Part shown: positions 42,654 through 60,738 of the stretch, piece after piece
Position numbering within the stretch: position 1 is the first letter of the stretch
How the letters are laid out: the number at the start of each line of letters is the position of its first letter
Virus record (IMG/VR): IMGVR_UViG_3300036770_004143
Span: 1-64,000 of that record
DNA: 64,000 nt
Reading direction: 5' to 3' (one strand)
The notes under the pieces: model-generated
Seen by the model: only the letters and a program-made list of their open reading frames with translations
Told to the model about the DNA's origin: nothing
Databases searched by the model: none
Translations under genes and position numbers: made by a program

Positions 42654-43237
42654 GTCCTATATATCTTTCCTTTTATAACTCCAGGTTTTATCATTTCTCT
42701 TAATTGTTTATTTGTGTATTTTTTTAATGGTGTGTTATATATATGTAAATTACCACCAACTTTCAAGTCTTCTGGTAATGAGGTTATATTTGAATATGCT
42801 AAATTCAAATAACCACCAACTTTCAAACCTTTTGGTAATGAGGTTATATTTGAATATGATAAATACAAATTACCTCTAACTATTAACCCTTCTGGTAATG
42901 ATTTTATTTTTGAATAATGTAAATACAAATCATCACCAACTTCCAATCCTTCTGGTAATGATATTATTTCTGAATATGATAAATCCAAATAACCAAAAAC
43001 TTTCAAGCCTTCTGGTAATGAGGTTATGTTTGAATCATTTAAATTTAAATTCCCCTCAACCTCTAATCCTTCTGGCAATGAGGTTAGAATTGTTCTTCTT
43101 AAATCCAAAGTACCACTAACTTTCAAATCTTCTTTTGTTAATGGTATATTATTAATTAATTTCCATTTAACTGGTGCATTTTGCTCTCCTTTCTCTTCAA
43201 GGAAATCAAATATTCTTTTTAGTGCTTCTTTTTTCAT
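42650..43237 (-). CDS. LRR array protein 3 (6 repeats)
   Basis: Same caps and repeats. Confidence 0.85.
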   Translation of the reverse strand: MKKEALKRIFDFLEEKGEQNAPVKWKLINNIPLTKEDLKVSGTLDLRRTILTSLPEGLEVEGNLNLNDSNITSLPEGLKVFGYLDLSYSEIISLPEGLEVGDDLYLHYSKIKSLPEGLIVRGNLYLSYSNITSLPKGLKVGGYLNLAYSNITSLPEDLKVGGNLHIYNTPLKKYTNKQLREMIKPGVIKGKIYRT

Positions 43238-43641
43238 CTCCTATATATCTTTCCTTTTATAACTCCAGGTTTTATCATTTCTATTAATTGTTTATTTGTG
43301 TATTTTTTTAATGGTGTGTTATTTATATGTAAATTCCCACCAACTTTCAATCCTTCTGGTAGTGAGGTTATTTTTGAACCCATTAAAAATAAAGCACCTT
43401 CAACTGTTAAATCATTTGGTAATGAGGTTATGTCTGTTAAATATAAATTCAAATAACCACCAACTTTCAATCCTCTTGGTAATGAGGTTATTTTTGAGTA
43501 ATGTAAATTCAAATCACCTTTAACATTTAAATCTTCTTCTATTAATGGTTCATTATTTTTAAATTTCCATAAAAATGGTGCTCTATGCTCTTCCTTCTCT
43601 TCAAGGAAATCAAATATTCTTTTTAGTGCTTGTTTTTCCAT
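43234..43641 (-). CDS. LRR array protein 2 (3 repeats)
   Basis: Same caps and repeats. Confidence 0.85.
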   Translation of the reverse strand: MEKQALKRIFDFLEEKEEHRAPFLWKFKNNEPLIEEDLNVKGDLNLHYSKITSLPRGLKVGGYLNLYLTDITSLPNDLTVEGALFLMGSKITSLPEGLKVGGNLHINNTPLKKYTNKQLIEMIKPGVIKGKIYRR

Positions 43642-44045
43642 TATCTAACTATATCATATTTTATAAATCCAGGTTTAATCATTTCCCTTAATTCTTCACC
43701 TGAATATTTTGTTAATGGTGTTCCATAAATATACAAATCACCCCCAACTTCCAATCCTTTTGGTAATGTTTGTATTGGCAAAAAAGCTAATAGTAAATTA
43801 TTCCCAACTTTCAATCCTTCTGGTAATGTTTCTATATTTAATTGTATTAAATCTAATGTCCCCCCAACTTTCAATCCTTTTGGTAATGAAGTTATGTTTG
43901 TTCCTGATAAATCCAAATTGCCTTTAACATTTAATTCTTCTTCTCTTAATGGTATATCATGCATCAATTTCCATAATAATGGTGGATTACAATTTTCCTT
44001 CTCTTCAAGAAAATCAAATATTATTTTTAGTACAGTATTATCCAT
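43641..44045 (-). CDS. LRR array protein 1 (3 repeats)
   Basis: Start taken at MDNTVLKIIFDFLEEK by alignment with paralogs. Confidence 0.85.
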   Translation of the reverse strand: MDNTVLKIIFDFLEEKENCNPPLLWKLMHDIPLREEELNVKGNLDLSGTNITSLPKGLKVGGTLDLIQLNIETLPEGLKVGNNLLLAFLPIQTLPKGLEVGGDLYIYGTPLTKYSGEELREMIKPGFIKYDIVR

Positions 44046-44053
44046 TATCTTAA

Positions 44054-44070
44054 TATTTATATTATAAATA
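44054..44070. promoter_or_regulatory. Palindromic pair of TATTTATA motifs serving the divergent LRR array and SOD
   Basis: TATTTATA-T-TATAAATA; each copy is 17-18 nt upstream of the start codon on its own strand. Confidence 0.6.
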
Positions 44071-44079
44071 TAATCTTTT

Positions 44080-44769
44080 ATGAAAATACTGGAAACAATC
44101 AAAGAAGAAATAATATCAAGAATACATAAAGATAATGTTGATTTCTTAATTCAAGAAATGAAAAAAGTTGGCATTGAAAAACTTCCTTATTCATATGCTT
44201 CATTAAAACCTTTTGTTGATGAAAAGACAATGAATATTCATTATAATAAACATTATATTGGTTATGTGGATAAATTGAATAAAGCATTAAAGAACACAAA
44301 ATCAAATGGTGATTTAAAGCAAATCATATCAAATATAAGCAAATATGATGATAAGATTAGGAATAATGCTGGTGGTGCATTTAATCATGCTTTATTCTGG
44401 AATATGTTAACCCCCACCAAAAAGAATGTTCCAAGTGAATTAAAAACAAAAATAAATGCAAGTTTTGGGACATTTAATGCTTTCAAGAAAAAGTTTGAGG
44501 AGGTTGCAAAAGACCATTTTGGATCCGGATGGGTCTGGCTTGTTGCAACCAAAAATAATAGATTAAAAGTAATAAGCACACCAAACCAGGATAATCCCCT
44601 TATGAATGTGATTAAGGATGGGGGTTTTCCAATATTGGGATTGGATTTATGGGAACATGCTTATTATCTAAAATATCAAAACAAAAGGGATGAATATATT
44701 CATAACTTTTGGGATTATGTAAATTGGGATTTTGTTCTTGAATTATATCAAAATGCAAATGATAAGTAG
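44080..44769 (+). CDS. sodA: Fe/Mn superoxide dismutase (Mn-type signature) with N-terminal extension
   Basis: LPYSY..L.P, H..KH..YV, NNAGGAFNH.LFW, FGSGWVWL, NQD, DLWEHAYYL.YQN.R. Confidence 0.9.
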   Translation: MKILETIKEEIISRIHKDNVDFLIQEMKKVGIEKLPYSYASLKPFVDEKTMNIHYNKHYIGYVDKLNKALKNTKSNGDLKQIISNISKYDDKIRNNAGGAFNHALFWNMLTPTKKNVPSELKTKINASFGTFNAFKKKFEEVAKDHFGSGWVWLVATKNNRLKVISTPNQDNPLMNVIKDGGFPILGLDLWEHAYYLKYQNKRDEYIHNFWDYVNWDFVLELYQNANDK

Positions 44770-46678: not shown

Positions 46679-49357
46679 TTAAACATTATCATATATTAAG
46701 TTTGGGTTCACATCTATTTTTTCCCAAAACTTAACCTCATCTTCGGATATAAGCATAACCTCATTTAAATCATCTTGATTCTTCTCCTCATAAGGAATAC
46801 CATTAATCAATGTGCATTCTTCTTTTGTGAAGAATTGTCTATCTGCTGGGTCTTTTATTAAAATTCTATCCCTAATCTCTGGGCTAAAAGCAACCAATAA
46901 TGGAGTTATCCTTTTATTAAAAGTTACAACAGCCCGTGGCACATTATATTCACCAGTCAAGTCAGGGGTTTTTTCAAACACATTCTGATCAATATAATAG
47001 CAATTTAATTTAATACCATCCTTTGTCTTTGACACATCACCATGTGATTGTTTTGTCCCATTATTTACATAGTAAATTATATCCCCAAGATTAACATGTA
47101 GTTTCTCCTTTATGATTAATTCCATATGCGCCATCTTACTTGTAGTACTCCCAGCCTTATTTAAGGTTTTTGATTTCTTTATATAATCTTGGACACTTTG
47201 CCTAACCCTTGCTTTGTTTGCAATTTCAATTAGGGGAATTTCTTTATTATAAATCTTTTCAAAATAATTATAATATTCCTCAATAAATTCTTTTCCTTTC
47301 CCTTCAAGTAATAACTTAACCCCAACGTCAATAAACCTTTCAATGTATTGTGGAAGTTTCTTTGATTTGATTGAATTACCTGTCAACTTTATTTTGCCAT
47401 CATTTTTCATAATAGCATAGTTTTTTCTTGCAAAATTTACACAAGATGCCCAATGACCATCTAAATCCAGAGCCATCTCTTTTTTCATATATAAGTCATT
47501 GTATTCTGCAACATCAGCATATATACCTTTATAAACCTTATCTAGTTTAACTTTCCAGTTATTACCCTTACCAACATATTCCCTATTCTCAAAATCATCT
47601 GGTGCTGAAAAGTTGACACCATCTGTATCACAAACTAATGGAACATAACCCCTATCCATAAAGAATTTAATCATATGTCTTAAATATAGTCTCCCTGTGC
47701 AAGTTATCTCTTCACCCTTATCCATTTCAGCCCAGGGGAAAACTAATGGTGCAGATAATGAACCAAACAAAGAGTTGATGAAAATCTTTATTGGTAATTG
47801 CTTATTATCATAAGTTGCTGAAATTTTCTTGTCTTTGTCCTTCCACTCTTCTGCCAAATTCTTATAATCTATCCTTGCATTTCTAAAAAACTTTAACATA
47901 CCTTTCAAAACACCAGTTATATCACAAGAGGGGAATACGTCATGTGCCAATTGTATGGATGGATATAGGGATGAAAAGTCAAGTTTTATAATATTCTTTG
48001 AATACCCCACTTTAACTAACCTAGATAATCCCCCAACAAAGTTTCTCTTACCCTCACTTTGGGGTATGGCTAACTGATTATTATATGACCAAGCCAACAT
48101 CAACACCTTCCATAAACCTGCTGTACCCATTGTATAAATCCTTTCAAAAGGTAATGGGACCATTTTTGCCAATAAAAATGATGCTTGACTAAATTCTGAA
48201 TCAACTCTCATTGTTTCTTCCAAGTCATCATCAAGATATGCTTCAACAAGTTTATCACCTGTAATTCTTTTATATACTTTTGGAAATCTAATATCAAGAT
48301 CAGGATAATCTGATGCTAATTTATATTTACCATTATTAACATTTAAGAAATATTCTTCTTTATCTTGATACATTTTACCAATCTTTGTGTGTTCAATATA
48401 CACACGATCTTCATCTTCTGCATTTATATATTTTGTAATATATTTAAGACCAGCAGATTTTATATCACTATTAATTGCTTGTGCCCTTCTTACAGAGTGA
48501 ATTACATCAATAACATTATAACCCCAAATAGAGGTCTGTGTGTAATTCTCAACATCACCACCTAATTTCAACATAGAATCCCTTCTTGTATAGGATTTTG
48601 TTGGATTCAATGACTTACAAGCAGTTGGTGCATGTATCTTTAATATCTCACATCTTTTGAAAATCCACTCCCAGTCAAACGTTGATGAATTATAACCTGA
48701 TATAATTGTTGGTTTTATTTCATCAATAACTTTAAAGAACTCAATAATACCATTTGCCTCATCCTCTGGATTGATACATTCTATAATCTTAGAATAACCT
48801 TTATTGGTTTTAATACCAATCATAAATATTCTACCATCTGTAGGCTCTAATGCTGTGGTTTCTAAGTCAAATACAAGTCTTGTTATATCATCATAAGATT
48901 CAAAACCTTTAAATAATCTTTTACCTTTGGATATGAGATATTGGTCAACTGGGGGCAACATAATCATTTTAGTTCTCCCAATTTCACTCTTTGGATCCAA
49001 TCCACCCTCTTTAAAGAACGCATTTAAATGTCTATAACCCTTTAATGATTGAACCAAGAACTTCATTCCATTTTCCAATCTTGGATGGTCATCTGTTCTT
49101 AATTTTGTTATCATAATTCCATGTTTAGTCATAGCTTCCTTTTGTAAAGCCTTTGACTTATTATAGAAATTTAATGAATTTAAATTCCCAACCCAACAGA
49201 ATGCTGTGAAAGTATCTCTTGAAATTTGTTTACCTTTATTTGGGACTTCCTTTATTTTATATATGTCATTTGACATAAAATCATATTCCAAAGCAACAAT
49301 ATGCTCCTCTGGATCTGTTCCATTAAGGAATTCCTCAATATCTTGAGTTGATATCAT
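46679..49357 (-). CDS. Family B DNA polymerase
   Basis: Exo DLETT and YNSSTFD; Pol LDFSSLYPS, KIFINSLFG, CDTDG, KNYA. Confidence 0.95.
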   Translation of the reverse strand: MISTQDIEEFLNGTDPEEHIVALEYDFMSNDIYKIKEVPNKGKQISRDTFTAFCWVGNLNSLNFYNKSKALQKEAMTKHGIMITKLRTDDHPRLENGMKFLVQSLKGYRHLNAFFKEGGLDPKSEIGRTKMIMLPPVDQYLISKGKRLFKGFESYDDITRLVFDLETTALEPTDGRIFMIGIKTNKGYSKIIECINPEDEANGIIEFFKVIDEIKPTIISGYNSSTFDWEWIFKRCEILKIHAPTACKSLNPTKSYTRRDSMLKLGGDVENYTQTSIWGYNVIDVIHSVRRAQAINSDIKSAGLKYITKYINAEDEDRVYIEHTKIGKMYQDKEEYFLNVNNGKYKLASDYPDLDIRFPKVYKRITGDKLVEAYLDDDLEETMRVDSEFSQASFLLAKMVPLPFERIYTMGTAGLWKVLMLAWSYNNQLAIPQSEGKRNFVGGLSRLVKVGYSKNIIKLDFSSLYPSIQLAHDVFPSCDITGVLKGMLKFFRNARIDYKNLAEEWKDKDKKISATYDNKQLPIKIFINSLFGSLSAPLVFPWAEMDKGEEITCTGRLYLRHMIKFFMDRGYVPLVCDTDGVNFSAPDDFENREYVGKGNNWKVKLDKVYKGIYADVAEYNDLYMKKEMALDLDGHWASCVNFARKNYAIMKNDGKIKLTGNSIKSKKLPQYIERFIDVGVKLLLEGKGKEFIEEYYNYFEKIYNKEIPLIEIANKARVRQSVQDYIKKSKTLNKAGSTTSKMAHMELIIKEKLHVNLGDIIYYVNNGTKQSHGDVSKTKDGIKLNCYYIDQNVFEKTPDLTGEYNVPRAVVTFNKRITPLLVAFSPEIRDRILIKDPADRQFFTKEECTLINGIPYEEKNQDDLNEVMLISEDEVKFWEKIDVNPNLIYDNV

Positions 49358-49389
49358 AAGTATGTAATTTAAGGTTAAAGATTAAACTA

Positions 49390-49764
49390 TTAATTGAACT
49401 TCTTAATAAATGAGTCCAAAATAATAATAGTTAATTCTTCCCTTAAAGGCAATATGAGGTCTCCATCTTCATTTCTAATTAAGAATTCTCCTTTATATAT
49501 ACCTGGTGTGTTGGTCTCTCTTTTTTTGAATTGATAATATATATAATACTCTATGGTGGGGGTTGGTTCTGTTGTTTCTTTTGCAACTAAATAAGCCTCT
49601 GCATTTGTGATTTTATATGAATTATTCTTTGTATCAATCATAGAAAATAATATGGATGAAGATTCCAAATCTTCCATAAATTTCTTATAATCTGATCTAC
49701 CATCTTTTATAGGTTCAACTTTTAATATAGGTAAATCTGCATTTTTTTTTATATAAAAATTCAT
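49390..49764 (-). CDS. Hypothetical protein, possibly a BppU-like Ig-fold virion protein
   Basis: FYIKK....P.L...IYYQF....T...G.YKGEF.I......LP pattern. Confidence 0.5.
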   Translation of the reverse strand: MNFYIKKNADLPILKVEPIKDGRSDYKKFMEDLESSSILFSMIDTKNNSYKITNAEAYLVAKETTEPTPTIEYYIYYQFKKRETNTPGIYKGEFLIRNEDGDLILPLREELTIIILDSFIKKFN

Positions 49765-49810
49765 ATTATCTTTATTAATAAATATATGAAAAATATAAAT
49801 TCAAAAAAAC

Positions 49811-49842
49811 GTTGCCTAAAATATTTTGTTTGGTTATACTTG
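49811..49842 (+). promoter_or_regulatory. Candidate Bacteroidota-type promoter for the receptor gene
   Basis: GTTG, 20 nt, TATACTTG (one mismatch per box). Confidence 0.45.
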
Positions 49843-49891
49843 TAAAGTCTTATTTAAAATAAATTAATTTTTTTCACAAAACAATTTTACT

Positions 49892-52800
49892 ATGAAAAAC
49901 ATTTTTAAAACGTTGCTATTCACATTTGCAACGTTAACAATTAGTTATGGCCAAGTAACAACTTCAGCCATATCAGGAACAATCAAAGATGCAAGTAATG
50001 AGGTGCTTATTGGTGCAACAATTGAAGCAGTTCATTTACCATCTGGAACAAGTTATGGTACATCCACAGATGTTGATGGTACATATAGGATTTCAGGAAT
50101 GCGCATTGGTGGTCCTTATAGCATCACAGTTAGCTATGTAGGTTATGCCACAAAAACCCAATCAAATGTCATTTTGAACTTGGGGTCAACAGCAAATCTA
50201 AGTTATTCACTTGATGTGGTTGAATATGGTTTGACTGAAGTTACTATTAATGCAAACAAAAGTGGTATTTTTTCATCTAATAGAACAGGTGCTGCCACAC
50301 AGTTTAATTCAACTATGATTAATAGTTTACCAACAATTGGAAGAACAATTGATGATATCACAAAATATAATGCTTATGGAAATGGGCGTTCATTTGGTGG
50401 TCAAGATAGCCGTTTTAACAACTTCACAATTGATGGTTCTGTATTCAACAATGGCTTTGGTCTTGGGTCTTCTGCTGCTGCTGGTGGTAGAACAGGAACA
50501 ACAGCAATCTCCATTGATGCACTTGAAGAAGTGCAATTGAATATTGCCCCCTTTGATGTTAGACAATCAGGGTTTGTTGGTGCTGGTGTAAATGCTGTAA
50601 CCCGCTCTGGAACAAATGATATTGAAGGATCATTCTATCGTTTGTTTAGGTCAAGTGATTTAGTTGGTAAAATAGTAAATGGTGTTAAACTACCTACAAT
50701 CTTTGTTGATGAAAAAACAACAGGGTTTAGGATTGGTGCACCAATTATTAAGAACAAGTTGTTTATCTTTGCAAATGCTGAACAATTTGTTGGGTCAACT
50801 CCAGCATTAAGTTGGCAAACAAACAAGCCTGGTGCAACAGGCAATGTATCAAGAGTAACTGAAAGTGATTTGAAGGATTTGGCTTCATTTATGAAAACAA
50901 ACTTTAATTATGAGTTGGGACAACTTGATAATTTTAACAATGATGTAAAGAGTACAAAAGGGCTTATTCGTTTGGATTATAACATTAATCAAAAACATAA
51001 AGCGTCTTTAAGGTATTCTCATCATAATTCTGAATCTGAACAACTTATTAGTTCATCAAATAGTTCTAATACTGCAGGTAATGGAAATAGACAAAACTCT
51101 GCCTTTGCAATTTCAGGGGAAAACACAGGTTATCTTATTCAAGATAATACAAGGTCAGTAGCATTTGAATTGAATTCAGTTCTAACATCAAAAATATCAA
51201 ACAATTTTATTGCAACTTACAATAAGCAAATTGAAGATAGAAAATATAGAACAGATTTATTCCCAACTGTGGACATTTTAAAAGATGGTACAACTTATAC
51301 AACAGTTGGTTTTGACCCCTTTACACCAAATAATAAATTGAATTATAGTACATTGAATTTGACAAACAATTTTAATTTACTATCTGGAAAACATTATTTC
51401 ACTTTTGGTGTAGGTTATGAGTATTTCCAATCAAATAATGTGTTCTTCCCAGCATCAAATGGTGTCTATGTATATAACTCTATTGATGACTTCAAGAAAG
51501 CAGCATTACAATTCAAAAATGACCCAAACAATCCACTTTCACCAGTTACTGTTAATCGTTACAATTTAAGATATTCATTACTACCAGGGGGTATTGAGCC
51601 AATGCAAACCTTAAAAGTTTCAACATTAAGTGCTTATGTTCAAGATGAATATACATTAACTGAAAAGTTAAAAATAACTGCAGGTTTAAGAGGCGATGTT
51701 GTTATGTATGACAATTCAACAGCAGCAGATTTCTATAATCCAGTTGTTGGTGGTTTGACATTCACAGATAAAAATGGCCAACCTACTAAGATTAACACAA
51801 ATAAATTCCCAAGCAGAGCATTATTGTTATCCCCAAGATTAGGATTCAACTATGATGTGGATGGTGAGAGAACAACCCAAGTTAGGGGTGGAACAGGAAT
51901 ATTTGTTTCTCGTATTCCACAAGTATTAGTTTCAAATCAATTAGGTAATAATGGTGTAAATACAGCTGTAATCAATGTAACAAATACAACAGCATACCCA
52001 TTCACAACTGACCCAAGCAGATTTGCACCAACAACAACAGATATTACAAGTTTACGTCCTTATGTTATTAATGCGTCAAGTCAGGATTTGAAATACCCAT
52101 CAGTATGGAAATCAAATATTGCTGTTGACCACAAATTACCTTTTGGGTTAGTTGCTACATTAGAAGGTGTATATGGTAAGACATTATCTGGTTTAAGATA
52201 TATTGATGCTAACTTAAAAGCACCAGATAGATATTTGGCAGATGAAAGACCACGTTTCCCAGCATCAGGTGTAACAAGTTCAGGTTCTGGTGCAACAAAT
52301 ACAGTTGCTGTTGCAAGATTCTTAAACCCAACCATTGCAAATGCGTTTGTTCTTACAAATACAGATAGAGGTTATTCTTATGCTTTAACTGCAAAGATTG
52401 AAAAACCAGCAGTTAATGGTTTAGGTGGTATGATTGGTTATACCAATGCAAAATCCACTGACCTCCAATCAGTTGGTAGCACAGTTCAAGCAAATGCCCC
52501 TACTGTTGGCGGACAAAACTTCTTAACGCCTTCCTTTACAGATAATGATTTACGTCATAGATTTGTTGGATATGTTAACTATAGAATAAATTATGGTGGC
52601 AAGTTTGGAGGTTCAACAGAAGTTACATTAGGTGCAACATCTGCAAGTGGAAGCAAATTAAGTTATATTTATGGAAATGATTTAAATGGTGATGGTCAGA
52701 TTAATGATTTGATTTATATACCACAAAATGCCACAGAATTGACATTTGCAACACTTACAGCAGGTGGTAAGACTTTCACCCCAGAACAACAACAAGTAGC

Positions 52801-53215
52801 ATTAGATGCTCTTATTTCAAGCGATGAATACCTTAACTCACGTAGAGGAACATATGCACAAAGAAATGGTGGATTTTTTCCTTGGTTAACAAGAGTTGAT
52901 TTATCAGCAGTTCAAGAAGTTTATGTTAATGTTAATGGTAAGTTAAATAGATTACAATTTAGAGCAGATATTCTTAACTTTGGAAATATGTTAAACAATG
53001 CTTGGGGTGTAGGGTATTCCACAACATCTGGTAGTTTTGGCACAGCAAGTCCTTTGACAGTTGCATCAGTTTCAGCAGCAGGTGTGCCAACATATAGAAT
53101 GGCAACAAGAGTTGTTGATGGTGCTACACAATTACTTGACAAGACATTTGTTAAGACAATTAGTGTTGGAAATGCTTGGCAGGCTCAATTAGGGTTAAGG
53201 TATTTCTTTAATTAA
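49892..53215 (+). CDS. TonB-dependent outer-membrane receptor (Oar-like, N-terminal carboxypeptidase-regulatory-like domain)
   Basis: Sec signal peptide; ISGTIKD..LIGATI..; plug NFTIDG...[11 protein letters not shown]...[21 protein letters not shown]; YVQDE; SPRLGFNYD; C-terminal beta-signal QLGLRYFFN. Confidence 0.9.
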
Positions 53216-53360
53216 TAAACAAGTGGTGTCCTCAATATAAGGTTGGGGGCATCTTTTAAAATTTTTAGATTATTTAAAATACAATAAAATATTTAAATCT
53301 TGCCAAAACAAAAAATAAAATAGAGATTTGGCAACTTATAAAAAATTCAAGAATTAGGGG

Positions 53361-53398
53361 AAAGGGGTAGAATACTACCCCTTTTTTTATTATATTTG
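53361..53398 (+). terminator. Terminator followed by a TAnnTTTG box for metK
   Basis: AAAGGGGTAG-AATA-CTACCCCTTTTTTT, then TATATTTG (53391-98). Confidence 0.65.
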
Positions 53399-53428
53399 TA
53401 TTCATTACATAACTTAAAACAAAAAAAT

Positions 53429-54562
53429 ATGAGATTAATAACATCAGAGAGTGTTTCTTGTGGGCATCCAGATAAGGTTGCTGATCAGATTTCAGATGCC
53501 ATTTTGGATGCTTACCTTACATTAGACCCCAATGCAAAGGTTGCAGTTGAAACAATGGTAAAAGACAATTGTGTGGTATTAGGGGGTGAAATTACTAGCA
53601 CTCATACAATTAATTATGAGAACATTATCAAAGCTGTGATTGAAGATATTGGCTACCATGATGCTAATCATGGGTTTTATTTCAATAATATCACTATAAT
53701 TAATTTGATTGGAAAACAAAGTCCTGAAATTAATTCTGCTGTTTTACAGAATGGTGAAGAATCTTTGGGGGCAGGCGATCAAGGTTTTATGACAGGATTT
53801 GCAACAAATGAAACAGAAACATATATGCCAATTGGTATGTATGTTGCAAAGAAATTGGCAGATTATGTTTATAGTCTTGATTTAGGTCCAGATATTAAAA
53901 CACAAGTGACAATTGAAGAATGGCCTGATTTTAAAAGAATCCATACCATTTTGGTTTCTACAATGCATAGGACATTTACCTTGGAAGAGTTGAGGACAAA
54001 ACTCACTAAATTCATCTATGATAATAATATGGAACTTCAAGATGATATATTTGCACTTATTGACAAGGAAACAAAAATTGTTATAAATCCAGCTGGTTCT
54101 TGGCATGTTGGTGGTCCAGTTGCAGATTGTGGTGTTACAGGAAGAAAGATTGTGGTTGACCAATATGGACCATATAACCCTGTTGGTGGGGGTGCATTTA
54201 GTGGAAAAGACCCAAGCAAGGTAGATAGAAGTGGTGCTTATTTAGCAAGGTATATTGCAAAAAACATTGTAGCAGCAGGGTTTGCAGATAAATGTGCTGT
54301 TGAAATTGCTTATATGATTGGCGTTGCTAAACCAGCATCACTAAACATAAACACATTTGGGCAATATTCTAATGAATGGTTAGAGGATATTGTTAGTAGG
54401 ATATTCCCAATGACACCATCTAGCATTATTGATCATTTTAATTTGAAAAGACCAATCTATCTTGATTCATCAAGAGGTCATTTTGGAAATGATATAATGC
54501 CTTGGGAAAAATTGGATATGGTTTATGAGTTAAAGCAATTAGCGGCTATTCATAAGGTTTAG
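53429..54562 (+). CDS. metK: S-adenosylmethionine synthetase
   Basis: TSESVSCGHPDKVADQISD, GAGDQG, KTQVT, G.TGRKIVVDQYG, GGGAFSGKDPSKVDRS, GHFG. Confidence 0.97.
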   Translation: MRLITSESVSCGHPDKVADQISDAILDAYLTLDPNAKVAVETMVKDNCVVLGGEITSTHTINYENIIKAVIEDIGYHDANHGFYFNNITIINLIGKQSPEINSAVLQNGEESLGAGDQGFMTGFATNETETYMPIGMYVAKKLADYVYSLDLGPDIKTQVTIEEWPDFKRIHTILVSTMHRTFTLEELRTKLTKFIYDNNMELQDDIFALIDKETKIVINPAGSWHVGGPVADCGVTGRKIVVDQYGPYNPVGGGAFSGKDPSKVDRSGAYLARYIAKNIVAAGFADKCAVEIAYMIGVAKPASLNINTFGQYSNEWLEDIVSRIFPMTPSSIIDHFNLKRPIYLDSSRGHFGNDIMPWEKLDMVYELKQLAAIHKV

Positions 54563-55702
54563 ATAATTGTCAATAAAATCCTGGGGGTAGTTAGACTTTT
54601 TCATAGTTCTAACTACCTCATTTATTTTATCTTCATCTGATAACCTTGGATTTGAACTAACACCATCCTCTATTGGCCAACCATTTAAATCTGATACTGG
54701 TAATTTATATTCTTTATTGTCTTTCTTTGATGTGATGTTTTTGACCTTCTCCCAAATTACAGCCAACAAAGTACTATCATGCCACTTGTATATCATACCT
54801 TTATAACCCATTTTCTCCAACATATTTGACATATATATCACCTGCATTTGGTATGGTACATTATCACTCCCATACATTTTAGCAGCAATATCATATAAGT
54901 TTAATGGATCTTTATTGAAGGGATATAAATCTTTCAAATCAACTTTTGCTGTATATAATGTACCAGAAACAATCCTTTCTTTTTGATTTAAATTTGTATA
55001 AAAGAATAATCTATTTTTCCCCCACCATTGCTCTGAACTTGTGTATGAATGTTTTCCAAAATGAGATGGATCTAAGTATTCCAAATCTGGTTCACCAAAA
55101 TGATATAACTTAACATAATCACCTTCTGTTTCCAATTGGGAAAGCCAAAAGTCATTAAATAATACTTTATTTGGTTTTTCTGGCAAATTATTTACATCTC
55201 CCTTTATAGTTGATTCTAATAATTGCTTCACCTCTGGATGAGATAAAAATAAATCAATATCTTTTTTTATTCTTTTTGAATCACAAATTGTTGCTTTTTT
55301 AAGAAAACGTTTTGGTATTTTATTGTATTCCTTATGCCAAATTTCTATTCTATAATCTTCTGGTAAATCTAGTAATTTTTTATCATACCAATCTTGCATT
55401 CTTTGATTTACATCTTCCTCTGTTGATAGTCCATTTGAATCTAAATATAGATTGTCTATTTTAACATAGGCATGGACAATAGTTGAATCCTCCAATTCAC
55501 CCTCATCATAATCATAAATTAAATCAGCCAATATTAAATAATATCTAATATTTCTATCTGGGTATTGTTTTTTTAATTTAACAATAAGATTATCCGCAAA
55601 ATAATTACAGAACCCATCTTGATAATTATATTCATTACTTGTGTTCCACTTTGGTTCAAGTTCTTCCCTTAATATTTCTTTTATTGATTGGATTAGTTTC
55701 AT
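54539..55702 (-). CDS. Hypothetical two-domain protein; C-half possibly ADP-ribosyltransferase-like
   Basis: N-terminal IKEILREE; G.C...HAYV...LDS papain-like hint; LYH...LDP..FG...FFYT...G.LY...V. Confidence 0.45.
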   Translation of the reverse strand: MKLIQSIKEILREELEPKWNTSNEYNYQDGFCNYFADNLIVKLKKQYPDRNIRYYLILADLIYDYDEGELEDSTIVHAYVKIDNLYLDSNGLSTEEDVNQRMQDWYDKKLLDLPEDYRIEIWHKEYNKIPKRFLKKATICDSKRIKKDIDLFLSHPEVKQLLESTIKGDVNNLPEKPNKVLFNDFWLSQLETEGDYVKLYHFGEPDLEYLDPSHFGKHSYTSSEQWWGKNRLFFYTNLNQKERIVSGTLYTAKVDLKDLYPFNKDPLNLYDIAAKMYGSDNVPYQMQVIYMSNMLEKMGYKGMIYKWHDSTLLAVIWEKVKNITSKKDNKEYKLPVSDLNGWPIEDGVSSNPRLSDEDKINEVVRTMKKSNYPQDFIDNYLNLMNSR

Positions 55703-55728
55703 ATACATAAATATATCATAATCACATT

Positions 55729-56985
55729 TTAACCAATATTAAGTTGCCCTGTAATTCTATCACACCAACCTTTTGATGTTGAATATGGCCAAACAACCCA
55801 ATATTTTGGCTGTTTTGTTGTTTGAAAATCTCTCCATATCTTGCAATATTTATCTGGGTCGTTCATCATTGAATTAATCTCATTCTTATCAGCATCCCTT
55901 CTATATAATGTTTCATCATTCTCATCATGGAATGCAACCACCCAATATTCATAATCTTTTTCTGGAACTGAACTATATTGGACATCAATGCAATGCCGGA
56001 ATATAATGGAAAAACTATTCTCCCATTCTTCTTCTGTCTTATATTCCTCCTTAACTGGGGGATTTTTCTTATCTATTGTCCATTGTTGAACTGCACGTTT
56101 TGCAAAATGAATTCCAGCATATTTTTCATAATCCCTTAATGTTCTAACTGGACCAAACCCATATAATCCATCATGACCCTCTTGTTCCACACCATCCACA
56201 CCAAACAATCTCTTATTTAAATAATGTGCCCTATCATTACGTTTAACCCATTCCTTATCATCATCCCATTGTTTAACCTTTCCCTTTCTTGTATATTCAT
56301 GATATATGATTGGAAAGTGGGGGTGAAACAAATCATAACCCCAAGTATAAGCCCTAACTGCAATGGATATCTCCTCACCATGAAAATAATATTCTGGATT
56401 ATGTTGAACCTCCTTTGCAAATTGCCCCAATGTGAAACAATAATGTGCTGAATAAAATCTTGCTGGAATTGGTTTTTGTAATGTCTTCCATTCATCAATT
56501 GTTTCCGGCATAAAAAATACATTCCCCTCTGGTGCAAACCTATCAAAAACCATCCTCCAAGGGTCTTGCACCCTCCCTGCTGGATCATTTGTTGGTTCAT
56601 AAGAACAAGCATAGGAAGTTAATAAAGGCTTCTTATAGCCATCTTTCTGTAACCCCTTAATTATTTTTATTAATGTGTCATCCCAATCTTGATTGAAACG
56701 CATATGTGAATCAAGTTGAAGGGTATATTCCTCATTATTATACAATTGCTGAAGTTTATTCCTTGCCCAACAAGCACCTTTTGATTCAGCATAAGGAATA
56801 TCCAATATTTTAAATCTTTTATCTTTTCTCCACTTATCAAGATTATCAAAACCATCCTCATCAGCATATTGTCTTGCAATGGCAAAAACAAGGTTCTTTG
56901 GTTTTTTTGCTTTATCCAGAATATCTTCAATGGTTTTAACTAGTTCAGGGTCACGATAACTTGCAATTTGAACAAATATTTTCAT
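55729..56985 (-). CDS. GT60-like polypeptide N-acetylglucosaminyltransferase
   Basis: IFVQIASYRDPEL..TI, SKGACWAR, LQLDSHMRF..DWD, F.GEE....RAYTWGYD...P....YH.Y. Confidence 0.8.
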   Translation of the reverse strand: MKIFVQIASYRDPELVKTIEDILDKAKKPKNLVFAIARQYADEDGFDNLDKWRKDKRFKILDIPYAESKGACWARNKLQQLYNNEEYTLQLDSHMRFNQDWDDTLIKIIKGLQKDGYKKPLLTSYACSYEPTNDPAGRVQDPWRMVFDRFAPEGNVFFMPETIDEWKTLQKPIPARFYSAHYCFTLGQFAKEVQHNPEYYFHGEEISIAVRAYTWGYDLFHPHFPIIYHEYTRKGKVKQWDDDKEWVKRNDRAHYLNKRLFGVDGVEQEGHDGLYGFGPVRTLRDYEKYAGIHFAKRAVQQWTIDKKNPPVKEEYKTEEEWENSFSIIFRHCIDVQYSSVPEKDYEYWVVAFHDENDETLYRRDADKNEINSMMNDPDKYCKIWRDFQTTKQPKYWVVWPYSTSKGWCDRITGQLNIG

Positions 56986-57031
56986 ATATATTTTTAATAA
57001 AATAATAAGCGTTTATACAAAAAATTAAACC

Positions 57032-59389
57032 TTAATTCTCCCTTCTTAAATCACCAGCATAATGGTCAAATCTATGATGTTCAACAGGGGTTAATAACAA
57101 TATGCTAGGCTTGATAACATTCTTAATTGTTTCTTGATACATAAAAGACATCCATGTATTTTCAAAAGGGTGGGCAAATTTTGTATCAATAAACATTTTT
57201 TTATTCCCAGCCTTTGTTATAAAATGCGTCCAGTTGCAATAATAAATCTCACCATCAGCATAAGGCAAACCATCAAGAGATTTTATATTATTGAATTTTG
57301 TTCTTGGTGCATTTGGATCCAATCCATGTACTGGAAGATTTGGTTTCTCTGGCCAATTCTTAATTCTAAAGTCTTGGGGAACATTATACCAACTCCATTG
57401 TGTTGAATTATCCCCATAGAATTCACTAAAATTAATCTTTAAAAAATCATAACTTTCCTTCTGGATGATATTCAAACATTTATCATATAAGTTGGGGGAA
57501 TATCTATTGAACCCATTTCTACATACCTCATTTGGCTTGTTATAGAAATTCATATCATCCTCGGAGAATATCATAACATCCAAATCACTTGCATCAAAAT
57601 GCTCCGCAATAAACTGCCTTCCACCACATATCCCCAGATTATCTTTCTTTATATGCTCAAATCCATATTCCTCACATAATTCAATATATCTTGGTGTTGT
57701 TGTTAAATCTGTTGAATTATCCAATAAAAACTTGCTTGTCTTATGGATAAAATTGGCATCATAGTCCAACATAGATTTTATCAACGTTTCAAACTGGTTG
57801 GGTGAATTAAACCCAATAACATATAAGCCAACTTTTGAAGTATCCAAAGGCGTGCTACTTATCATCTTATTTTCTGATTTTATCTCTAATGTGTTATTCT
57901 TTAAATCCTCAAAAAACTTTCCAAACAACCCATCACCCCCAATTTCAAAATAATTAATCAAATCAGAATGTTTATAACACATAATGCTAAATATGGATTC
58001 CTCTGTCCCCATATAACCCTCTTGCAAAGTGGATGTCAATATATTATAATATATTGAATTAATATCACTTATGGTATTCTTTGGTCCACCAAAAAATCCA
58101 CCCCTTGCCACCTTATTAACCTTATCACCAACAAGTGAAACCATTTTGTTATATTCAAACCCATGTATTTCTGTTGTTGTTTCATAAGGAAAACACACAA
58201 AGCTAAATTTTGATATATATTTTGACAAATTATTCAAAACCTTATCATGAGTGAAATACCCTGGATGAACCGTATTTGTTAAACCAGCATCAATCCAAAA
58301 CATATATTCTGAATCAAATGGATCCATAATCTTTGCATCATGCAACAAGAACATCTTGGACATAACTAGGGGGTTATAGTATTCTAATTTTGCTTGTGTG
58401 GATTCTTCTAACCATCCAGCTTGTTGATACCAGTGGGGGTTTGTTCTTATTTTTTGGATTAAATTAAAGTAATTATTATTTTTGAACCAATCTAAATCTT
58501 TTTCAATAAAAAAAGTATTTTCTTCATTTCTATGTGTAAAAACAAACTCTTTTAATTTAGCATCACCAAATATAATTAGGTTATTTTCAACATCTAATAA
58601 TTGTTTAAATTTATCCAAATAATGATTATAAGAACGATTCCAACCATCACCCAATGAATCTCTTTTTATATCCCATAATCCAGTTACTAGTGTAACATTC
58701 CTTTTTTCTTGAGTAAAATCCATTATATTATTTCTAATTTTATCTAAATCCCAAAAAGCTAATGTTTTTCTATTCCCATTGTCAAAATTATCCACTATAA
58801 CATCTTCCTCTAAATAAATCTCAGGATTAGGTAAATTAAATGGATTAGACATTAAATTAACAGGATAAAACCTGCCGTATTCAACACCTTCATTTTCTCT
58901 ATGAATATCATCTTTTTTACAAGGAAACCATTTTTCACCTATTTTTTTAGCCCAAGTTGTACTTAAAAGATATTTACATTTTGAGTTCAAAATGTTTTTT
59001 ATGATTTTAACCCCATCTTCAATTGGCATATGACCAATAACGTCTCTAACAATTAGCAAATCACCATTAGGTATTTTATCATTTATTATGTCAAATTCTA
59101 TAAATTTTATTCTATTATTAGAATATCTTTCATTATTATAATCAATTGCTTTTTTTACAATGTCACCACCAGTATAACTTTCAAAATTAAAAACAATCTC
59201 CTTCATCCAGTTAAAGTCACCACAAGGGATGTCAACAACTGACTTTATGTTTTTATCTTTTATTAGTCTTTTTATATTTTCTCTAAGTTTTTGAGTTTCT
59301 AATAAAGTACTACCTGGTCCTGATTTACTTTCAGTGCTACCAAAACCATTATTATCATATATATTATTAAAAATATCTTTATAATTCAT
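57032..59389 (-). CDS. Tri-domain fusion: SAM methyltransferase + HtrL/YibB-like glycosyltransferase + GT-A domain
   Basis: SGPGS...VVDIPCGDFNW; VTLVTGLWDI...WIDAG...GGFFGG...GTEESI; NLGICGGR...FSEDDM. Confidence 0.7.
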   Translation of the reverse strand: MNYKDIFNNIYDNNGFGSTESKSGPGSTLLETQKLRENIKRLIKDKNIKSVVDIPCGDFNWMKEIVFNFESYTGGDIVKKAIDYNNERYSNNRIKFIEFDIINDKIPNGDLLIVRDVIGHMPIEDGVKIIKNILNSKCKYLLSTTWAKKIGEKWFPCKKDDIHRENEGVEYGRFYPVNLMSNPFNLPNPEIYLEEDVIVDNFDNGNRKTLAFWDLDKIRNNIMDFTQEKRNVTLVTGLWDIKRDSLGDGWNRSYNHYLDKFKQLLDVENNLIIFGDAKLKEFVFTHRNEENTFFIEKDLDWFKNNNYFNLIQKIRTNPHWYQQAGWLEESTQAKLEYYNPLVMSKMFLLHDAKIMDPFDSEYMFWIDAGLTNTVHPGYFTHDKVLNNLSKYISKFSFVCFPYETTTEIHGFEYNKMVSLVGDKVNKVARGGFFGGPKNTISDINSIYYNILTSTLQEGYMGTEESIFSIMCYKHSDLINYFEIGGDGLFGKFFEDLKNNTLEIKSENKMISSTPLDTSKVGLYVIGFNSPNQFETLIKSMLDYDANFIHKTSKFLLDNSTDLTTTPRYIELCEEYGFEHIKKDNLGICGGRQFIAEHFDASDLDVMIFSEDDMNFYNKPNEVCRNGFNRYSPNLYDKCLNIIQKESYDFLKINFSEFYGDNSTQWSWYNVPQDFRIKNWPEKPNLPVHGLDPNAPRTKFNNIKSLDGLPYADGEIYYCNWTHFITKAGNKKMFIDTKFAHPFENTWMSFMYQETIKNVIKPSILLLTPVEHHRFDHYAGDLRREN

Positions 59390-59392
59390 ATC

Positions 59393-60022
59393 CTATTTTT
59401 TTATTTTACAAACCCATACAGCATTAGAAAACTCATTTGGTTTGTAAGATTCTAAATTATTTTCAAGTACAGATTCATTAATATCTTCTTCGGTTATTTC
59501 GCACCAATTCCAAATTTTATCTTTAATTTCAGTTTCATACACTTCTTTATTAACTGAATAGTCGTGCGCTAAAATATAATCACCTGATTTTATTTTTTTT
59601 GATAAAACTTTAAATTCCCCTATTTTCCAACCACCATCACACAATACAATAGTAACACCATCTTTTTGAATAAAATCTACAACTTCTTGTTTTACACTTG
59701 ACCAATCATCACTAAAAATATTTTCAACTCTCACATCAATACCTTTTTCAATTATTTGATTATACCAGGGTCTTTCAGAAATATCATAAGACAATATTTT
59801 TGTATCCAAATTTAATTCATCTGAAATTATTTTTAAAAACTCTGTAAAACCCCCCAAAGCTGTACCTATTTCTAAAATCCTACTTGGTTTAACGTCATTT
59901 AAAAAATTATAAAATAGTTGATAGGCATGATGGCTTTGTTGTGCTGTACACCCCATAAATGCAGATAAACTATCACCATCAATCAAGTTTGTAAATCTAG
60001 TTATTCTTTCTTGTATATTCAT
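59393..60022 (-). CDS. Class I SAM-dependent methyltransferase (CmcI/Methyltransf_24-like)
   Basis: ILEIGTALGG, SYDI, LCDGG, GDYILAHD. Confidence 0.75.
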   Translation of the reverse strand: MNIQERITRFTNLIDGDSLSAFMGCTAQQSHHAYQLFYNFLNDVKPSRILEIGTALGGFTEFLKIISDELNLDTKILSYDISERPWYNQIIEKGIDVRVENIFSDDWSSVKQEVVDFIQKDGVTIVLCDGGWKIGEFKVLSKKIKSGDYILAHDYSVNKEVYETEIKDKIWNWCEITEEDINESVLENNLESYKPNEFSNAVWVCKIKK

Positions 60023-60024
60023 AA

Positions 60025-60738
60025 TTAAAATCTTCTATGTAATTTATTTGTTTTATCATGGAATTCAAAACAATCTGGCAAATAATGTCTAAAACTATCC
60101 CAATCCCATTTCATATTAGCTTCTAACGCTGAAACCCCAATGTCAAAACCATCAGGGTAATTCCTAATGTTATTGTGTACTGAATACCATAAAAATTCTT
60201 CCCATCGTCTAACAAAATATCTAAATTTCCAATTATTCCTAAAAACCAAAAATTGTTCATTAACTACATGAGCTTCATCCCACTTATCATGTTCAAATAC
60301 ATTATAGTCATACATTTTTCGATCAAAAAAACAATTACTCATATCTTTTTTATAATCACCAATTTTAGATGGTCTTTCAAATAAAAAATCTAAATCATTT
60401 TTTTCCATATGATTAAATAAATTAAACAATTTATCTTCGGAAAAATTTTCAGTCATTCTCCAATCAGCATCATTATATATAATATAATCATATCCTTTAT
60501 CTAAACAATATTTTAAAGATAAAACTTTTAAATTTAAAAAAAATGAAAATCCTGGATTACCATCATCATACTTGTCTAACTCAAATAAATCTAAATTGAC
60601 TTTGGGTCCAACAATGCAATTTTCATTTGTTGTTATATTAAAAGATGCTGTACAAGATTCACTATATTTACTATAACTCTCTGTAGCATTATCCAAGTAT
60701 GGTTGGCCAACTGCTAATGTTGTAAAAATATATTTCAT
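60025..60738 (-). CDS. Putative GT-A glycosyltransferase
   Basis: TTLAVG..Y N-terminus, LK, YIIYNDAD (DxD); cluster context. Confidence 0.55.
   Translation of the reverse strand: MKYIFTTLAVGQPYLDNATESYSKYSESCTASFNITTNENCIVGPKVNLDLFELDKYDDGNPGFSFFLNLKVLSLKYCLDKGYDYIIYNDADWRMTENFSEDKLFNLFNHMEKNDLDFLFERPSKIGDYKKDMSNCFFDRKMYDYNVFEHDKWDEAHVVNEQFLVFRNNWKFRYFVRRWEEFLWYSVHNNIRNYPDGFDIGVSALEANMKWDWDSFRHYLPDCFEFHDKTNKLHRRF

What the first reader, a model, noticed from the sequence alone, without database searches (positions are those of the whole stretch)
49892..53215. Phage-encoded full-length TonB-dependent outer-membrane receptor
Seen: an intact 1107-aa protein with signal peptide, plug, barrel and terminal beta-signal. 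It has its own candidate promoter and terminators, sits between PolB and metK, and uses A/T-ending codons like its neighbours. Established: such receptors import nutrients and often serve as phage receptors. Inference: the phage remodels the host outer membrane, either to import a limiting nutrient during infection or to compete for TonB or receptors and exclude superinfection. A 3.3-kb barrel gene is an unusual auxiliary gene.
Basis: partly seen in the sequence, partly recalled or inferred. Interest (0 to 1): 0.75.

Follow-up and report, generated by a model that had tools for sequence, protein, structure and literature searches.

The report
Phage-borne Oar-type TonB-dependent outer-membrane transporter
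A 270-kb freshwater phage that probably infects Saprospiraceae bacteria carries an intact, conserved and transcribed copy of its host lineage's large Oar-type outer-membrane transporter; this is a real example of a kind of phage gene that surveys have only recently described and whose function has not been tested.

Summary
Window 49892-53215 (+) is an intact 1107-aa ORF. It has a Bacteroidota-type signal peptide, a CarboxypepD_reg N-terminal extension, a TonB-box-like linker, a plug seen only by structure, and a 22-strand barrel. The best fold matches are Myxococcus Oar, FusA and YddB.

It is not a chimera. The window is the first 64 kb of a 270-kb IMG/VR phage record. The same gene sits at the same site (PolB, 124-aa ORF, gene, metK) in at least eight independent assemblies.

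Phage copies form one clade. That clade is sister to the single-copy ortholog (81% identity) of a low-GC Saprospiraceae MAG.

dN/dS among phage copies is 0.07-0.11. The plug has no change on the phage stem branch, and surface loops are not accelerated.

Freshwater metatranscriptome contigs cover the gene but not its flanks.

One sibling phage lacks the gene, so it is accessory. A second, unrelated and very large phage group captured a different member of the family.

Best reading: a working transporter, energised by host TonB, that adds to the host's own transport capacity. Its substrate is unknown, and receptor remodelling is not excluded.

Phage-encoded 22-strand OMPs were surveyed in an October 2026 preprint, so this is a new member of a known kind.

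The parts
49809..49853 (+). Conserved upstream block with a Bacteroidota-type promoter-like element: TTG at 49812-49814, 20-nt spacer, TATACTTG at 49835-49842. It also matches TTGCCT-N17-TATACT.
   Evidence: 42-44 of 45 bases are identical among phage relatives whose synonymous sites differ by 25-50%. The motif class is enriched in the 270-kb genome, 87 found against 32 expected. The block is not conserved in the sibling phage that lacks the gene. Promoter function is inferred, not shown.
49892..53215 (+). Coding sequence of the 1107-aa Oar-subclass TonB-dependent-type outer-membrane protein, stop codon included.
49892..49954 (+). Signal peptide, residues 1-21. Cleavage is predicted after SYG and leaves Q at +1.
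   Evidence: Sequence read directly. Homologs align here. Q-rule from PMC5837995. No signal-peptide predictor was available.
49970..50209 (+). N-terminal extension, a CarboxypepD_reg beta-sandwich (residues 27-106).
   Evidence: Pfam PF13620, E 2.6e-19. The own-genome search places it at 49970-50209.
50222..50290 (+). Flexible linker (residues 111-133) holding the TonB-box-like motif LTEVTINA (residues 114-121, nt 50231-50254).
   Evidence: pLDDT is below 50 for residues 111-133. The pattern L-x-x-[V/L]-x-I is conserved in homologs. The position corresponds to the Oar TonB box between extension and plug (PMC6434023). The binding test gave no answer.
50294..50623 (+). Plug domain (about residues 135-244).
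   Evidence: Seen only by structure. Solved transporters align from their plug onward. Pfam Plug is negative. 0 of 110 residues changed on the phage stem branch.
50624..53212 (+). 22-strand beta-barrel with long, structured outer loops (residues 245-1107).
   Evidence: PF25183, E 1.5e-50. Strand list from DSSP. Fold matches.
53225..53259 (+). Intrinsic-terminator-like hairpin followed by UCUUUU, 10 nt after the stop codon.
   Evidence: -16.4 kcal/mol, z -5.63. Relative L008 has a hairpin of different sequence at the same place.
53357..53388 (+). Second terminator-like hairpin with a T-run, just before metK.
   Evidence: An RNA-library contig ends at 53352.
46679..49357 (-). Context: phage family-B DNA polymerase, transcribed away from the gene.
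49390..49764 (-). Context: conserved 124-aa phage ORF of unknown function, which shares the intergenic spacer.
53429..54562 (+). Context: phage metK (SAM synthetase). The likely start is the ATG at 53429.
   Evidence: TIGR01034, E 1.6e-129. The relative has a 377-aa product. It is only 46-48% identical to bacterial metK.

Best explanation
This is a working outer-membrane transporter of the Oar subclass of TonB-dependent transporters. An ancestor of this jumbo-phage lineage captured it from a Saprospiraceae host lineage, and the lineage has kept it.

Proposed course of events, with each step marked as shown or inferred:
1. During lytic infection the gene is transcribed as a single-gene unit from its own conserved Bacteroidota-type promoter. 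Transcription is supported; the promoter is inferred.
2. The product is exported by Sec. Signal peptidase I cuts it to leave an N-terminal glutamine (inferred from sequence).
3. The host BAM machinery inserts it into the outer membrane (inferred).
4. The host TonB-ExbBD system energises it, because the phage record holds no TonB or ExbB (absence shown; coupling inferred).
5. There it does the same biochemical job as the host's own single-copy ortholog. This is inferred from the pattern of constraint.

The net effect would be to raise or maintain the infected cell's capacity for that transport during a long infection.

The substrate is unknown. The nearest characterised folds handle proteins: Oar is needed to secrete the protease PopC, and FusA imports ferredoxin.
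For: Phage origin. The window is bases 1-64000 of a 270,075-bp IMG/VR virus record that CheckV rates 90% complete. It holds tail sheath, DnaB, UvsX, SSB, RNR and PolB genes. No integrase or resolvase was found.

Not a chimera. The same gene sits at the same site in independent assemblies L002, L006, L007, L008-L010, L025, L029 and L032. Contigs from another study's DNA run bridge both junctions.

Fold. AF2 model with pLDDT 82.4. The top Swiss-Prot fold match is Oar P38370, E 3.4e-61, over residues 6-1106. The top PDB matches are FusA and YddB, followed by classic TonB-dependent transporters, all spanning plug plus barrel.

Origin. Phage copies are monophyletic (99*). They are sister (100*) to a bacterial clade that includes a Saprospiraceae MAG, and the whole group is nested among Haliscomenobacter and Saprospiraceae sequences. 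In that clade the gene lies among TamB, DnaK and Ldh genes. The MAG has one ortholog at 81% identity. Locus GC (0.35) and GC3 (0.19) are similar to the phage gene's.

Selection. dN/dS is 0.07-0.11 at dS 0.30-0.83 among phage copies.
- The phage stem branch carries 35 fixed changes and the bacterial sister stem 40.
- In the plug the counts are 0 of 110 (phage) and 2 of 110 (bacterial).
- In the outer loops they are 11 of 509 and 14 of 509.

Expression. Contigs from three freshwater metatranscriptome libraries lie only within 49867-53352. None lie on 49300-49863 or 53389-53500, while a DNA run covers everything evenly. Two of those libraries do not hold the adjacent 4.4-kb PolB-side stretch.

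Energy coupling. No TonB_C or ExbB in the phage record. A TonB gene is present in the candidate host MAG.
Against: - No substrate, localisation or TonB dependence has been measured.
- The TonB box is only a motif. The complex prediction with the candidate host's TonB C-terminal domain gave no answer.
- The RNA evidence comes from assembled contigs of runs that were chosen because they hold this stretch. They carry no strand information, and the tool warns that DNA can be present in RNA libraries.
- Outer-membrane proteins are stable, so it is not obvious why a phage must resupply one.
- A sibling phage lacks the gene, so it is dispensable.
- The host assignment rests on gene phylogeny and GC only.
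- Purifying selection with the ancestral pattern also fits any role that needs a natively folded protein at the surface. That includes receptor-level interference.
Confidence: 0.5

Rival explanations
1. Receptor-landscape remodelling or superinfection exclusion. The phage copy is inserted into the outer membrane to alter, crowd or mask surface receptors, possibly the host ortholog itself, so that other phages adsorb less well. It might also compete for limiting TonB.
For: TonB-dependent transporters are common phage receptors (established knowledge). The survey preprint proposes this role for phage-encoded outer-membrane proteins (10.64898/2026.10.24.761521). Five of the 35 phage-stem changes cluster at residues 625-641 in outer loop 6. 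The gene sits beside a large glycan-modification island that could also change the cell surface. Two phage lineages captured the family independently.
Against: Outer loops as a whole are not accelerated on the phage branch (11 of 509 against 14 of 509). They are also not especially variable among about 48 phage copies (21% of loop positions vary, against 35% in the N-terminal extension). Adding a protein 81% identical to the host's does not remove host receptors already in the membrane. The invariant plug and the retained TonB-box motif suggest that transport itself is under selection.
Confidence: 0.25
2. Outward secretion channel. Like Myxococcus Oar, which is required for TonB-dependent secretion of the protease PopC, the protein exports a host or phage protein across the outer membrane during infection.
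For: Oar is the best full-length fold match and has the same architecture: signal peptide, CarboxypepD_reg extension, TonB box, plug and barrel (PMC6434023).
Against: Sequence identity to Oar is only 14%. No PopC-like or other candidate cargo gene lies next to the gene in phage or bacteria. The Bacteroidota orthologs have no known secretion role.
Confidence: 0.1
3. Recently acquired passenger DNA with no role for the phage, or an assembly or binning artefact.
For: The locus is variable. A 129-aa ORF and a methylase are present in some relatives and absent in others, and one sibling lacks the gene.
Against: The gene has been kept intact across phage divergence up to dS 0.83 with dN/dS about 0.1. 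Its upstream region is more conserved than synonymous sites. Its tree agrees with the PolB tree. It appears in many independent assemblies.
Confidence: 0.03

Closest known systems
Oar (MXAN_1450, P38370) of Myxococcus xanthus and the 'Oar-like' subclass of TonB-dependent receptors
   Same: Same order of parts: signal peptide, CarboxypepD_reg N-terminal extension, TonB box, plug, 22-strand barrel. Similar length (1107 against 1061 aa). Oar is the best full-length fold match, E 3.4e-61 (PMC6434023, PMC1790865).
   Different: Only 14% identity. Oar matches Pfam Plug and TonB_dep_Rec according to its paper; this protein matches neither and matches PF25183 instead. Oar lies in a Ton gene cluster and has a known cargo; here there is neither. 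This copy is phage-encoded.
FusA (4zgv) and YddB (6ofr), protein-importing TonB-dependent transporters
   Same: Best solved-structure matches, E 8e-38 and 1e-34, over plug plus barrel. Both have large outer loops.
   Different: 10-12% identity. They have no CarboxypepD_reg extension. Their partner M16 protease (FusC, PqqL) has no counterpart in the phage record.
Beta-barrel outer-membrane proteins of huge phages, including 22-strand TonB-dependent receptors (Yuan & Chen, bioRxiv 10.64898/2026.10.24.761521). Also the TonB-dependent transporters listed in phages of ammonia oxidisers (10.64898/2026.05.02.722434) and one SusC-like entry in BFVD (A0A8D9FQQ5).
   Same: A phage of more than 200 kb carries a host-like 22-strand outer-membrane protein, next to glycosyltransferase genes, with metatranscriptomic support. 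The open question about its function is the same.
   Different: Those are survey-level reports. This case adds a close host-lineage ortholog (81%), a selection analysis by protein region, a natural gene-minus sibling, and a second independent capture of the same family.
SusC-like transporters of Bacteroidota polysaccharide utilisation loci
   Same: CarboxypepD_reg extension plus plug plus 22-strand barrel. Bacteroidota origin. Fold match to SusC Q8A1G1, E 8e-36.
   Different: No SusD-like partner gene beside it in the phage or in the bacterial ortholog loci. TM-scores are lower than for Oar.
Phage outer-membrane or receptor-modifying morons (lambda Lom, T5 Llp)
   Same: Phage-encoded proteins that end up in the host outer membrane and can change which phages adsorb (as summarised; T5 Llp from my own knowledge).
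   Different: Those are small 8-strand barrels or lipoproteins that bind or block a receptor. This is a full-size copy of a host transporter with no sign of a changed function.

Membership tests
TonB-dependent transporter (TBDT) | 22-strand outer-membrane beta-barrel | tested here: met
   The AF2 model (pLDDT 82.4) shows 22 long strands, turns of 2-6 residues on one side and loops of 18-80 residues on the other. At least 500 PDB matches were counted at E <= 0.001, and all 50 listed are TonB-dependent transporters. This rests on a predicted structure, not a solved one.
TonB-dependent transporter (TBDT) | N-terminal plug domain inside the barrel | tested here: met
   Met by structure only. FepA, BtuB, Cir, PfeA and others align from their plug onward to query residues of about 105-135 and beyond. 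The sequence model PF07715 gives no hit even at E 10.
TonB-dependent transporter (TBDT) | TonB box that binds the TonB C-terminal domain | tested here: inconclusive
   The motif LTEVTINA (114-121) lies in a disordered linker at the expected place and is conserved as L-x-x-[V/L]-x-I. The complex prediction with the candidate host's TonB C-terminal domain returned 'no answer'.
TonB-dependent transporter (TBDT) | A Ton system (TonB-ExbB-ExbD) available to energise it | tested here: met
   None in the phage record. A 303-aa TonB is encoded in the candidate host MAG G001. Coupling itself was not tested.
TonB-dependent transporter (TBDT) | Sec signal peptide and C-terminal beta-signal for BAM insertion | tested here: met
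   The N-terminus has the n-, h- and c-regions of a signal peptide, with Q at +1. The last strand is 1097-1106, and F1106 is conserved in at least 90% of the family. The final residue is N rather than an aromatic, which is a family-wide trait. Read by eye; no predictor was run.
Oar-like subclass of TBDTs | CarboxypepD_reg (PF13620 / PF13715) N-terminal extension before the plug | tested here: met
   PF13620 E 2.6e-19 and PF13715 E 8.5e-11, residues 27-117. The definition of the subclass is in PMC6434023 and PMC1790865.
Oar-like subclass of TBDTs | Role in protein secretion (PopC-type cargo) | not testable with these tools
   No cargo candidate lies next to the gene. This needs experiments.
SusC/SusD-type glycan importer | Adjacent SusD-like lipoprotein gene | tested here: not met
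   The neighbours are a 124-aa ORF and metK in the phage. In the sister bacterial clade they are patatin and DDAH genes on the opposite strand. No neighbour is conserved beyond family level in 34 bacterial loci.
Phage auxiliary (host-derived, accessory) gene | Located on a bona fide phage genome, host-derived by phylogeny, under selection, not universal among relatives | tested here: met
   (phage). (nested in bacterial sequences). (dN/dS 0.07-0.11). (sibling L132 lacks it).

The most novel reading that the evidence does not exclude
At least two phage lineages infecting Bacteroidota, which share no other gene in the flanks I could compare, independently captured members of the same Oar-type transporter family, and each has kept its copy under purifying selection. 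This suggests that this particular outer-membrane protein is a specific lever of infection rather than a generic nutrient gene. Two forms of that idea remain open. In one, it is a TonB-powered outward channel, as for Oar and PopC, that releases a phage or host protein before lysis. In the other, it is a phage-supplied replacement of the very receptor that these or rival phages use, which would reprogram who can adsorb to infected cells or to their vesicles and debris.
Probability: 0.15. Interest if true: 0.8.

Novelty: new member of a known kind. Interest (0 to 1): 0.45.

Why it matters
Phage genes that rebuild the host envelope are much less understood than those that rewire metabolism. This case is unusually clean for testing the idea. 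It offers:
- a 3.3-kb host-derived transporter with a close host-lineage ortholog (81%);
- clear purifying selection;
- transcript evidence from natural communities;
- a natural sibling phage without the gene;
- a second, abundant phage group that captured the same family independently.

It could show whether large phages boost the host's transport across the outer membrane or reshape the receptor surface. It could also give a first functional handle on the Oar-like transporters. These are near-ubiquitous in Saprospiraceae (48 of 61 sampled genomes), and I found no study of their function in Bacteroidota.

Tried and rejected
- Pfam Plug and TonB_dep_Rec models: no hit, even at E 10. NCBIfam and PHROGs: no family. 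Family profile against PDB sequences: nothing. The plug rests on the predicted structure only.
- Sigma-70 promoter scan: 17 hits against 22 expected, so it is uninformative.
- Complex prediction of residues 105-250 with the TonB C-terminal domain of the candidate host: 'no answer', not evidence either way.
- Conserved gene neighbours as a clue to the substrate: none beyond genus or family synteny in 34 bacterial loci.
- Co-transfer of the bacterial promoter: phage and bacterial upstream regions do not align convincingly. Rejected.
- Phage-encoded partners: no TonB_C, ExbB or M16 peptidase, and no second CarboxypepD_reg protein.
- Temperate lifestyle or lysogenic-conversion reading: no integrase or resolvase in the 90%-complete record. 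This makes it unlikely but does not exclude it.
- Accelerated evolution of surface loops, as a receptor arms race would predict: not seen.
- Close matches in the GenBank phage collection: none at DNA level. There is only a 33%-identical homolog on a 6-kb human-gut phage contig.
- No CRISPR-spacer or tRNA-based host assignment was attempted.
Full report
WHAT IS THERE

The ORF at 49892..53215 (+) is intact and encodes 1107 aa. Pfam finds a CarboxypepD_reg domain at residues 27-106 (E 2.6e-19). It also finds the outer-membrane barrel family OMP_b-brl_4 (PF25183) at residues 236-1053 (E 1.5e-50). NCBIfam and PHROGs give nothing. The Pfam Plug model gives no hit even at E 10. A profile of the family finds no PDB chain by sequence.

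An AlphaFold2 model built on a 38-sequence alignment is confident (pLDDT 82.4, pTM 0.81).
- Its best Swiss-Prot fold match is the Myxococcus xanthus TonB-dependent transporter Oar. The match has E 3.4e-61, covers query residues 6-1106 against Oar 10-1061, and has 14% identity.
- Its best solved-structure matches are the ferredoxin importer FusA and E. coli YddB, followed by PfeA, FepA, Cir, BtuB and other classic transporters.
- All of these align from about residue 105-135 to the C-terminus, which covers plug plus barrel.

From the secondary-structure string I count 22 barrel strands. One side has turns of 2-6 residues and the other has loops of 18-80 residues.

The N-terminus [20 protein letters not shown]|Q reads as a Sec signal peptide. 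The glutamine at +1 fits the Bacteroidetes Q-rule (PMC5837995).

Between the N-terminal extension and the plug lies a disordered linker (residues 111-133, pLDDT below 50). It contains LTEVTINA, and the pattern L-x-x-[V/L]-x-I is conserved in homologs. Oar has its experimentally tested TonB box at the corresponding place (PMC6434023).

The protein ends in ...RYFFN. The aromatic residue in second-to-last position is a family trait.

IS IT REALLY ON A PHAGE?

The window is bases 1-64000 of a 270,075-bp IMG/VR virus record that CheckV rates 90% complete. The window encodes a tail sheath, a gp13-like head completion protein, DnaB, UvsX, SSB, RNR and PolB. No integrase or resolvase was found in the record.

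The gene sits at the same place (PolB, 124-aa ORF, gene, metK) in independent assemblies from other samples:
- a 324-kb JGI contig, with the gene 95.6% and PolB 97.1% identical to the window's;
- IMG/VR contigs of 35 to 113 kb, with the gene 85-100% and PolB 92-100% identical.

In a DNA run from another study, one contig spans 49300-50841 and another spans 52089-53500. Together they cross both junctions. Fourteen DNA runs from nine studies hold 78-99% of the stretch's sampled words. Chimeric assembly is excluded.

WHERE IT CAME FROM

The protein search returned about 50 clusters at 94-100% identity and one at 88%. After those come proteins at 80-81%, and then Haliscomenobacter and Saprospiraceae proteins at 65-74%.

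The 80% protein lies in a bacterial chromosome context that includes TamB, DnaK, thioredoxin and Ldh genes. A protein of the same clade is encoded by a Saprospiraceae MAG. That 4.2-Mb genome has exactly one ortholog, at 81% identity.

In a 67-sequence tree the syntenic phage copies form one clade (99*). This clade is sister (100*) to the bacterial clade above and is nested within Saprospiraceae and Haliscomenobacter sequences.

The bacterial locus has GC 0.35 and its gene has GC3 0.19. The phage gene has GC3 0.185. By contrast, the phage metK is only 46-48% identical to the bacterial metK genes, so it is a much older phage gene.

The family occurs in 48 of 61 sampled Saprospiraceae genomes, usually once or twice per genome.

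Reading: one capture from a Saprospiraceae host lineage, followed by vertical descent in the phage. The gene tree and the PolB tree agree on this.

IS IT MAINTAINED AND USED?

Among phage copies, dN/dS is 0.07-0.11 at dS 0.30-0.83.

I polarised changes with Haliscomenobacter-type outgroups:
- The phage stem branch carries 35 fixed changes and the bacterial sister stem carries 40.
- The plug has 0 of 110 changes on the phage stem and 2 of 110 on the bacterial stem.
- The outer loops have 11 of 509 and 14 of 509.

The phage copy therefore evolves under the same constraints as the cellular gene. The only local oddity is five phage-stem changes at residues 625-641 in outer loop 6.

The 128-bp upstream spacer is 91-95% identical among relatives whose synonymous sites differ by 25-50%. 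It contains TTG, a 20-nt spacer and TATACTTG. This resembles the Bacteroidota -33/-7 promoter type as I know it (my reading). That motif class is enriched in the phage genome: 87 found against 32 expected for the loose form, and 41 against 12 for the strict form. Sigma-70 consensus hits are not above chance.

A strong hairpin followed by UCUUUU comes 10 nt after the stop codon (z -5.6). A relative has a hairpin of different sequence at the same place. A second hairpin precedes metK.

Three freshwater metatranscriptome libraries contain contigs at 90-100% identity only between 49867 and 53352. They have none on the 560-bp left flank or the 110-bp right flank, whereas the DNA run covers all of it evenly. 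Two of those libraries do not hold the neighbouring 4.4-kb PolB-side stretch.

This supports transcription as a single-gene unit. Three caveats apply: these are assembled contigs without strand information, the runs were chosen by this stretch, and DNA carry-over cannot be formally excluded.

ACCESSORY STATUS AND RECURRENCE

One close relative, L132 (PolB 91.5% identical), has a 202-aa ORF and a 129-aa membrane ORF where the transporter gene would be. It also lacks the promoter block proximal to the gene. The PolB tree places L132 inside the gene-bearing clade (100/100). Loss or replacement is therefore the simpler reading, although the outgroup branch is very long.

Separately, IMG/VR contigs L011-L027 carry a homolog that is 44-48% identical.
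- They show a phage context: primase, PhoH, helicase, ThyX, a GH19 lysozyme and 2OG oxygenases.
- In the flanks I could compare they share no other gene with this phage.
- Their proteins form a separate clade near Cyclobacteriaceae and Sediminibacterium sequences.
- A protein search with one of them listed 120 unnamed clusters at 83-97% identity, on contigs of up to 226 kb.

The same transporter family has therefore been captured at least twice by large phages.

HOW IT MOST LIKELY WORKS

The phage record holds no TonB or ExbB. The candidate host MAG encodes a 303-aa TonB.

The simplest account has the protein made during lytic infection, exported by Sec, inserted by BAM, coupled to host TonB, and doing what the host ortholog does. 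That would add transport capacity. All of these steps are inferred from sequence, structure and selection, and none has been measured.

A complex prediction of the TonB-box and plug fragment with the host TonB C-terminal domain gave no answer.

The substrate is unknown.
- Neither the phage nor the bacteria have a SusD partner or any neighbour conserved beyond family level.
- The phage has no M16 protease of the FusC type.
- The nearest characterised folds move proteins: Oar is needed to secrete PopC, and FusA imports ferredoxin.

RIVALS

Receptor remodelling or superinfection exclusion is the idea favoured in the survey preprint. It is not excluded. It is weakened by the absence of loop acceleration and by the invariant plug. 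A secretion role like Oar's is possible but has no cargo candidate. A neutral passenger or an artefact is effectively refuted.

WHAT IS KNOWN

[quoted passage not shown] These include 22-strand TonB-dependent receptors, often lie next to glycosyltransferase or transport genes, and have metatranscriptomic support. Function was not tested.
- A preprint on phages of ammonia oxidisers lists six TonB-dependent transporters.
- BFVD holds a single full-length phage transporter of this fold.

The kind is therefore known at survey level, and this is a well-resolved new member. I score interest at 0.45. A specialist would not be very surprised after the survey. The case is nevertheless a good experimental entry point, because it has a host-lineage ortholog, a gene-minus sibling and a second independent capture.

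Noticed in passing
window 40173-44102 (-): Tandem array of eight paralogous small genes (133-195 aa) that match one another's homologs at about 38-68% identity. They have no Pfam hit and at most a weak PHROG hit. The number and order of copies differ between related phages.
   Followed up: partly
window 16410-17600 (-): A TnpB / IS605 OrfB-type gene inside the phage genome, with HTH_OrfB_IS605, OrfB_IS605 and Cas12f1-like TNB domains (phrog_506, E 4e-133). A 107-aa ORF follows at 17606-17929.
   Followed up: no
window 17926-22602 (-) and 9594-16367 (-): Two giant ORFs (1558 and 2257 aa) with no PHROG family. The 1558-aa one contains an OmpA-like peptidoglycan-binding domain at 19906-20121.
   Followed up: no
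window 32493-36485 (-): A 1330-aa virion structural protein gene. The stretch 34001-36000 has unusual composition (GC 0.405, GC skew +0.565), which suggests a repetitive or low-complexity region.
   Followed up: no
window 54539-63659 (-): A glycan-modification island next to metK. It holds a GlcNAc-transferase, an HtrL/YibB protein with a methyltransferase part, an RMNT/CmcI-like O-methyltransferase, a GT10 fucosyltransferase-like protein, a PLOD-type glycosyltransferase and an FkbM methyltransferase. Together with the transporter gene it could form a cell-surface module.
   Followed up: partly
L132 7477-8487 (IMGVR_UViG_3300028394_002801): A sibling phage (PolB 91.5% identical) has a 202-aa ORF and a 129-aa membrane ORF in place of the transporter gene. 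The 129-aa ORF is also present downstream of the gene in L002 and L008 but is absent from the window.
   Followed up: yes
L011-L027, L139: A second, very diverse group of large freshwater phage contigs carries its own Oar-type transporter, 44-48% identical to this one. A search with one of these proteins listed 120 clusters at 83-97% identity. It reflects an independent capture.
   Followed up: partly
L100 (CAYNGR010000116.1) and L066 (CAZYMK010000348.1): Short contigs binned into 'Cyanobium' and 'Geobacter' MAGs carry this Bacteroidota/phage gene. L100 groups with the second phage group, and L066 is 83% identical to the window's protein. Both look misbinned.
   Followed up: no
window 44080-44769 (+): A phage Fe/Mn superoxide dismutase with a 30-residue hydrophilic N-terminal extension and no signal peptide. 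It is conserved (85-100%) in all relatives.
   Followed up: no
MT837825.1 (hit H1): A 6-kb 'Bacteriophage sp.' contig from human faeces encodes a full-length homolog, 33% identical over 98% of the query. It was the only near-full-length hit among 50,697 GenBank phage records.
   Followed up: no
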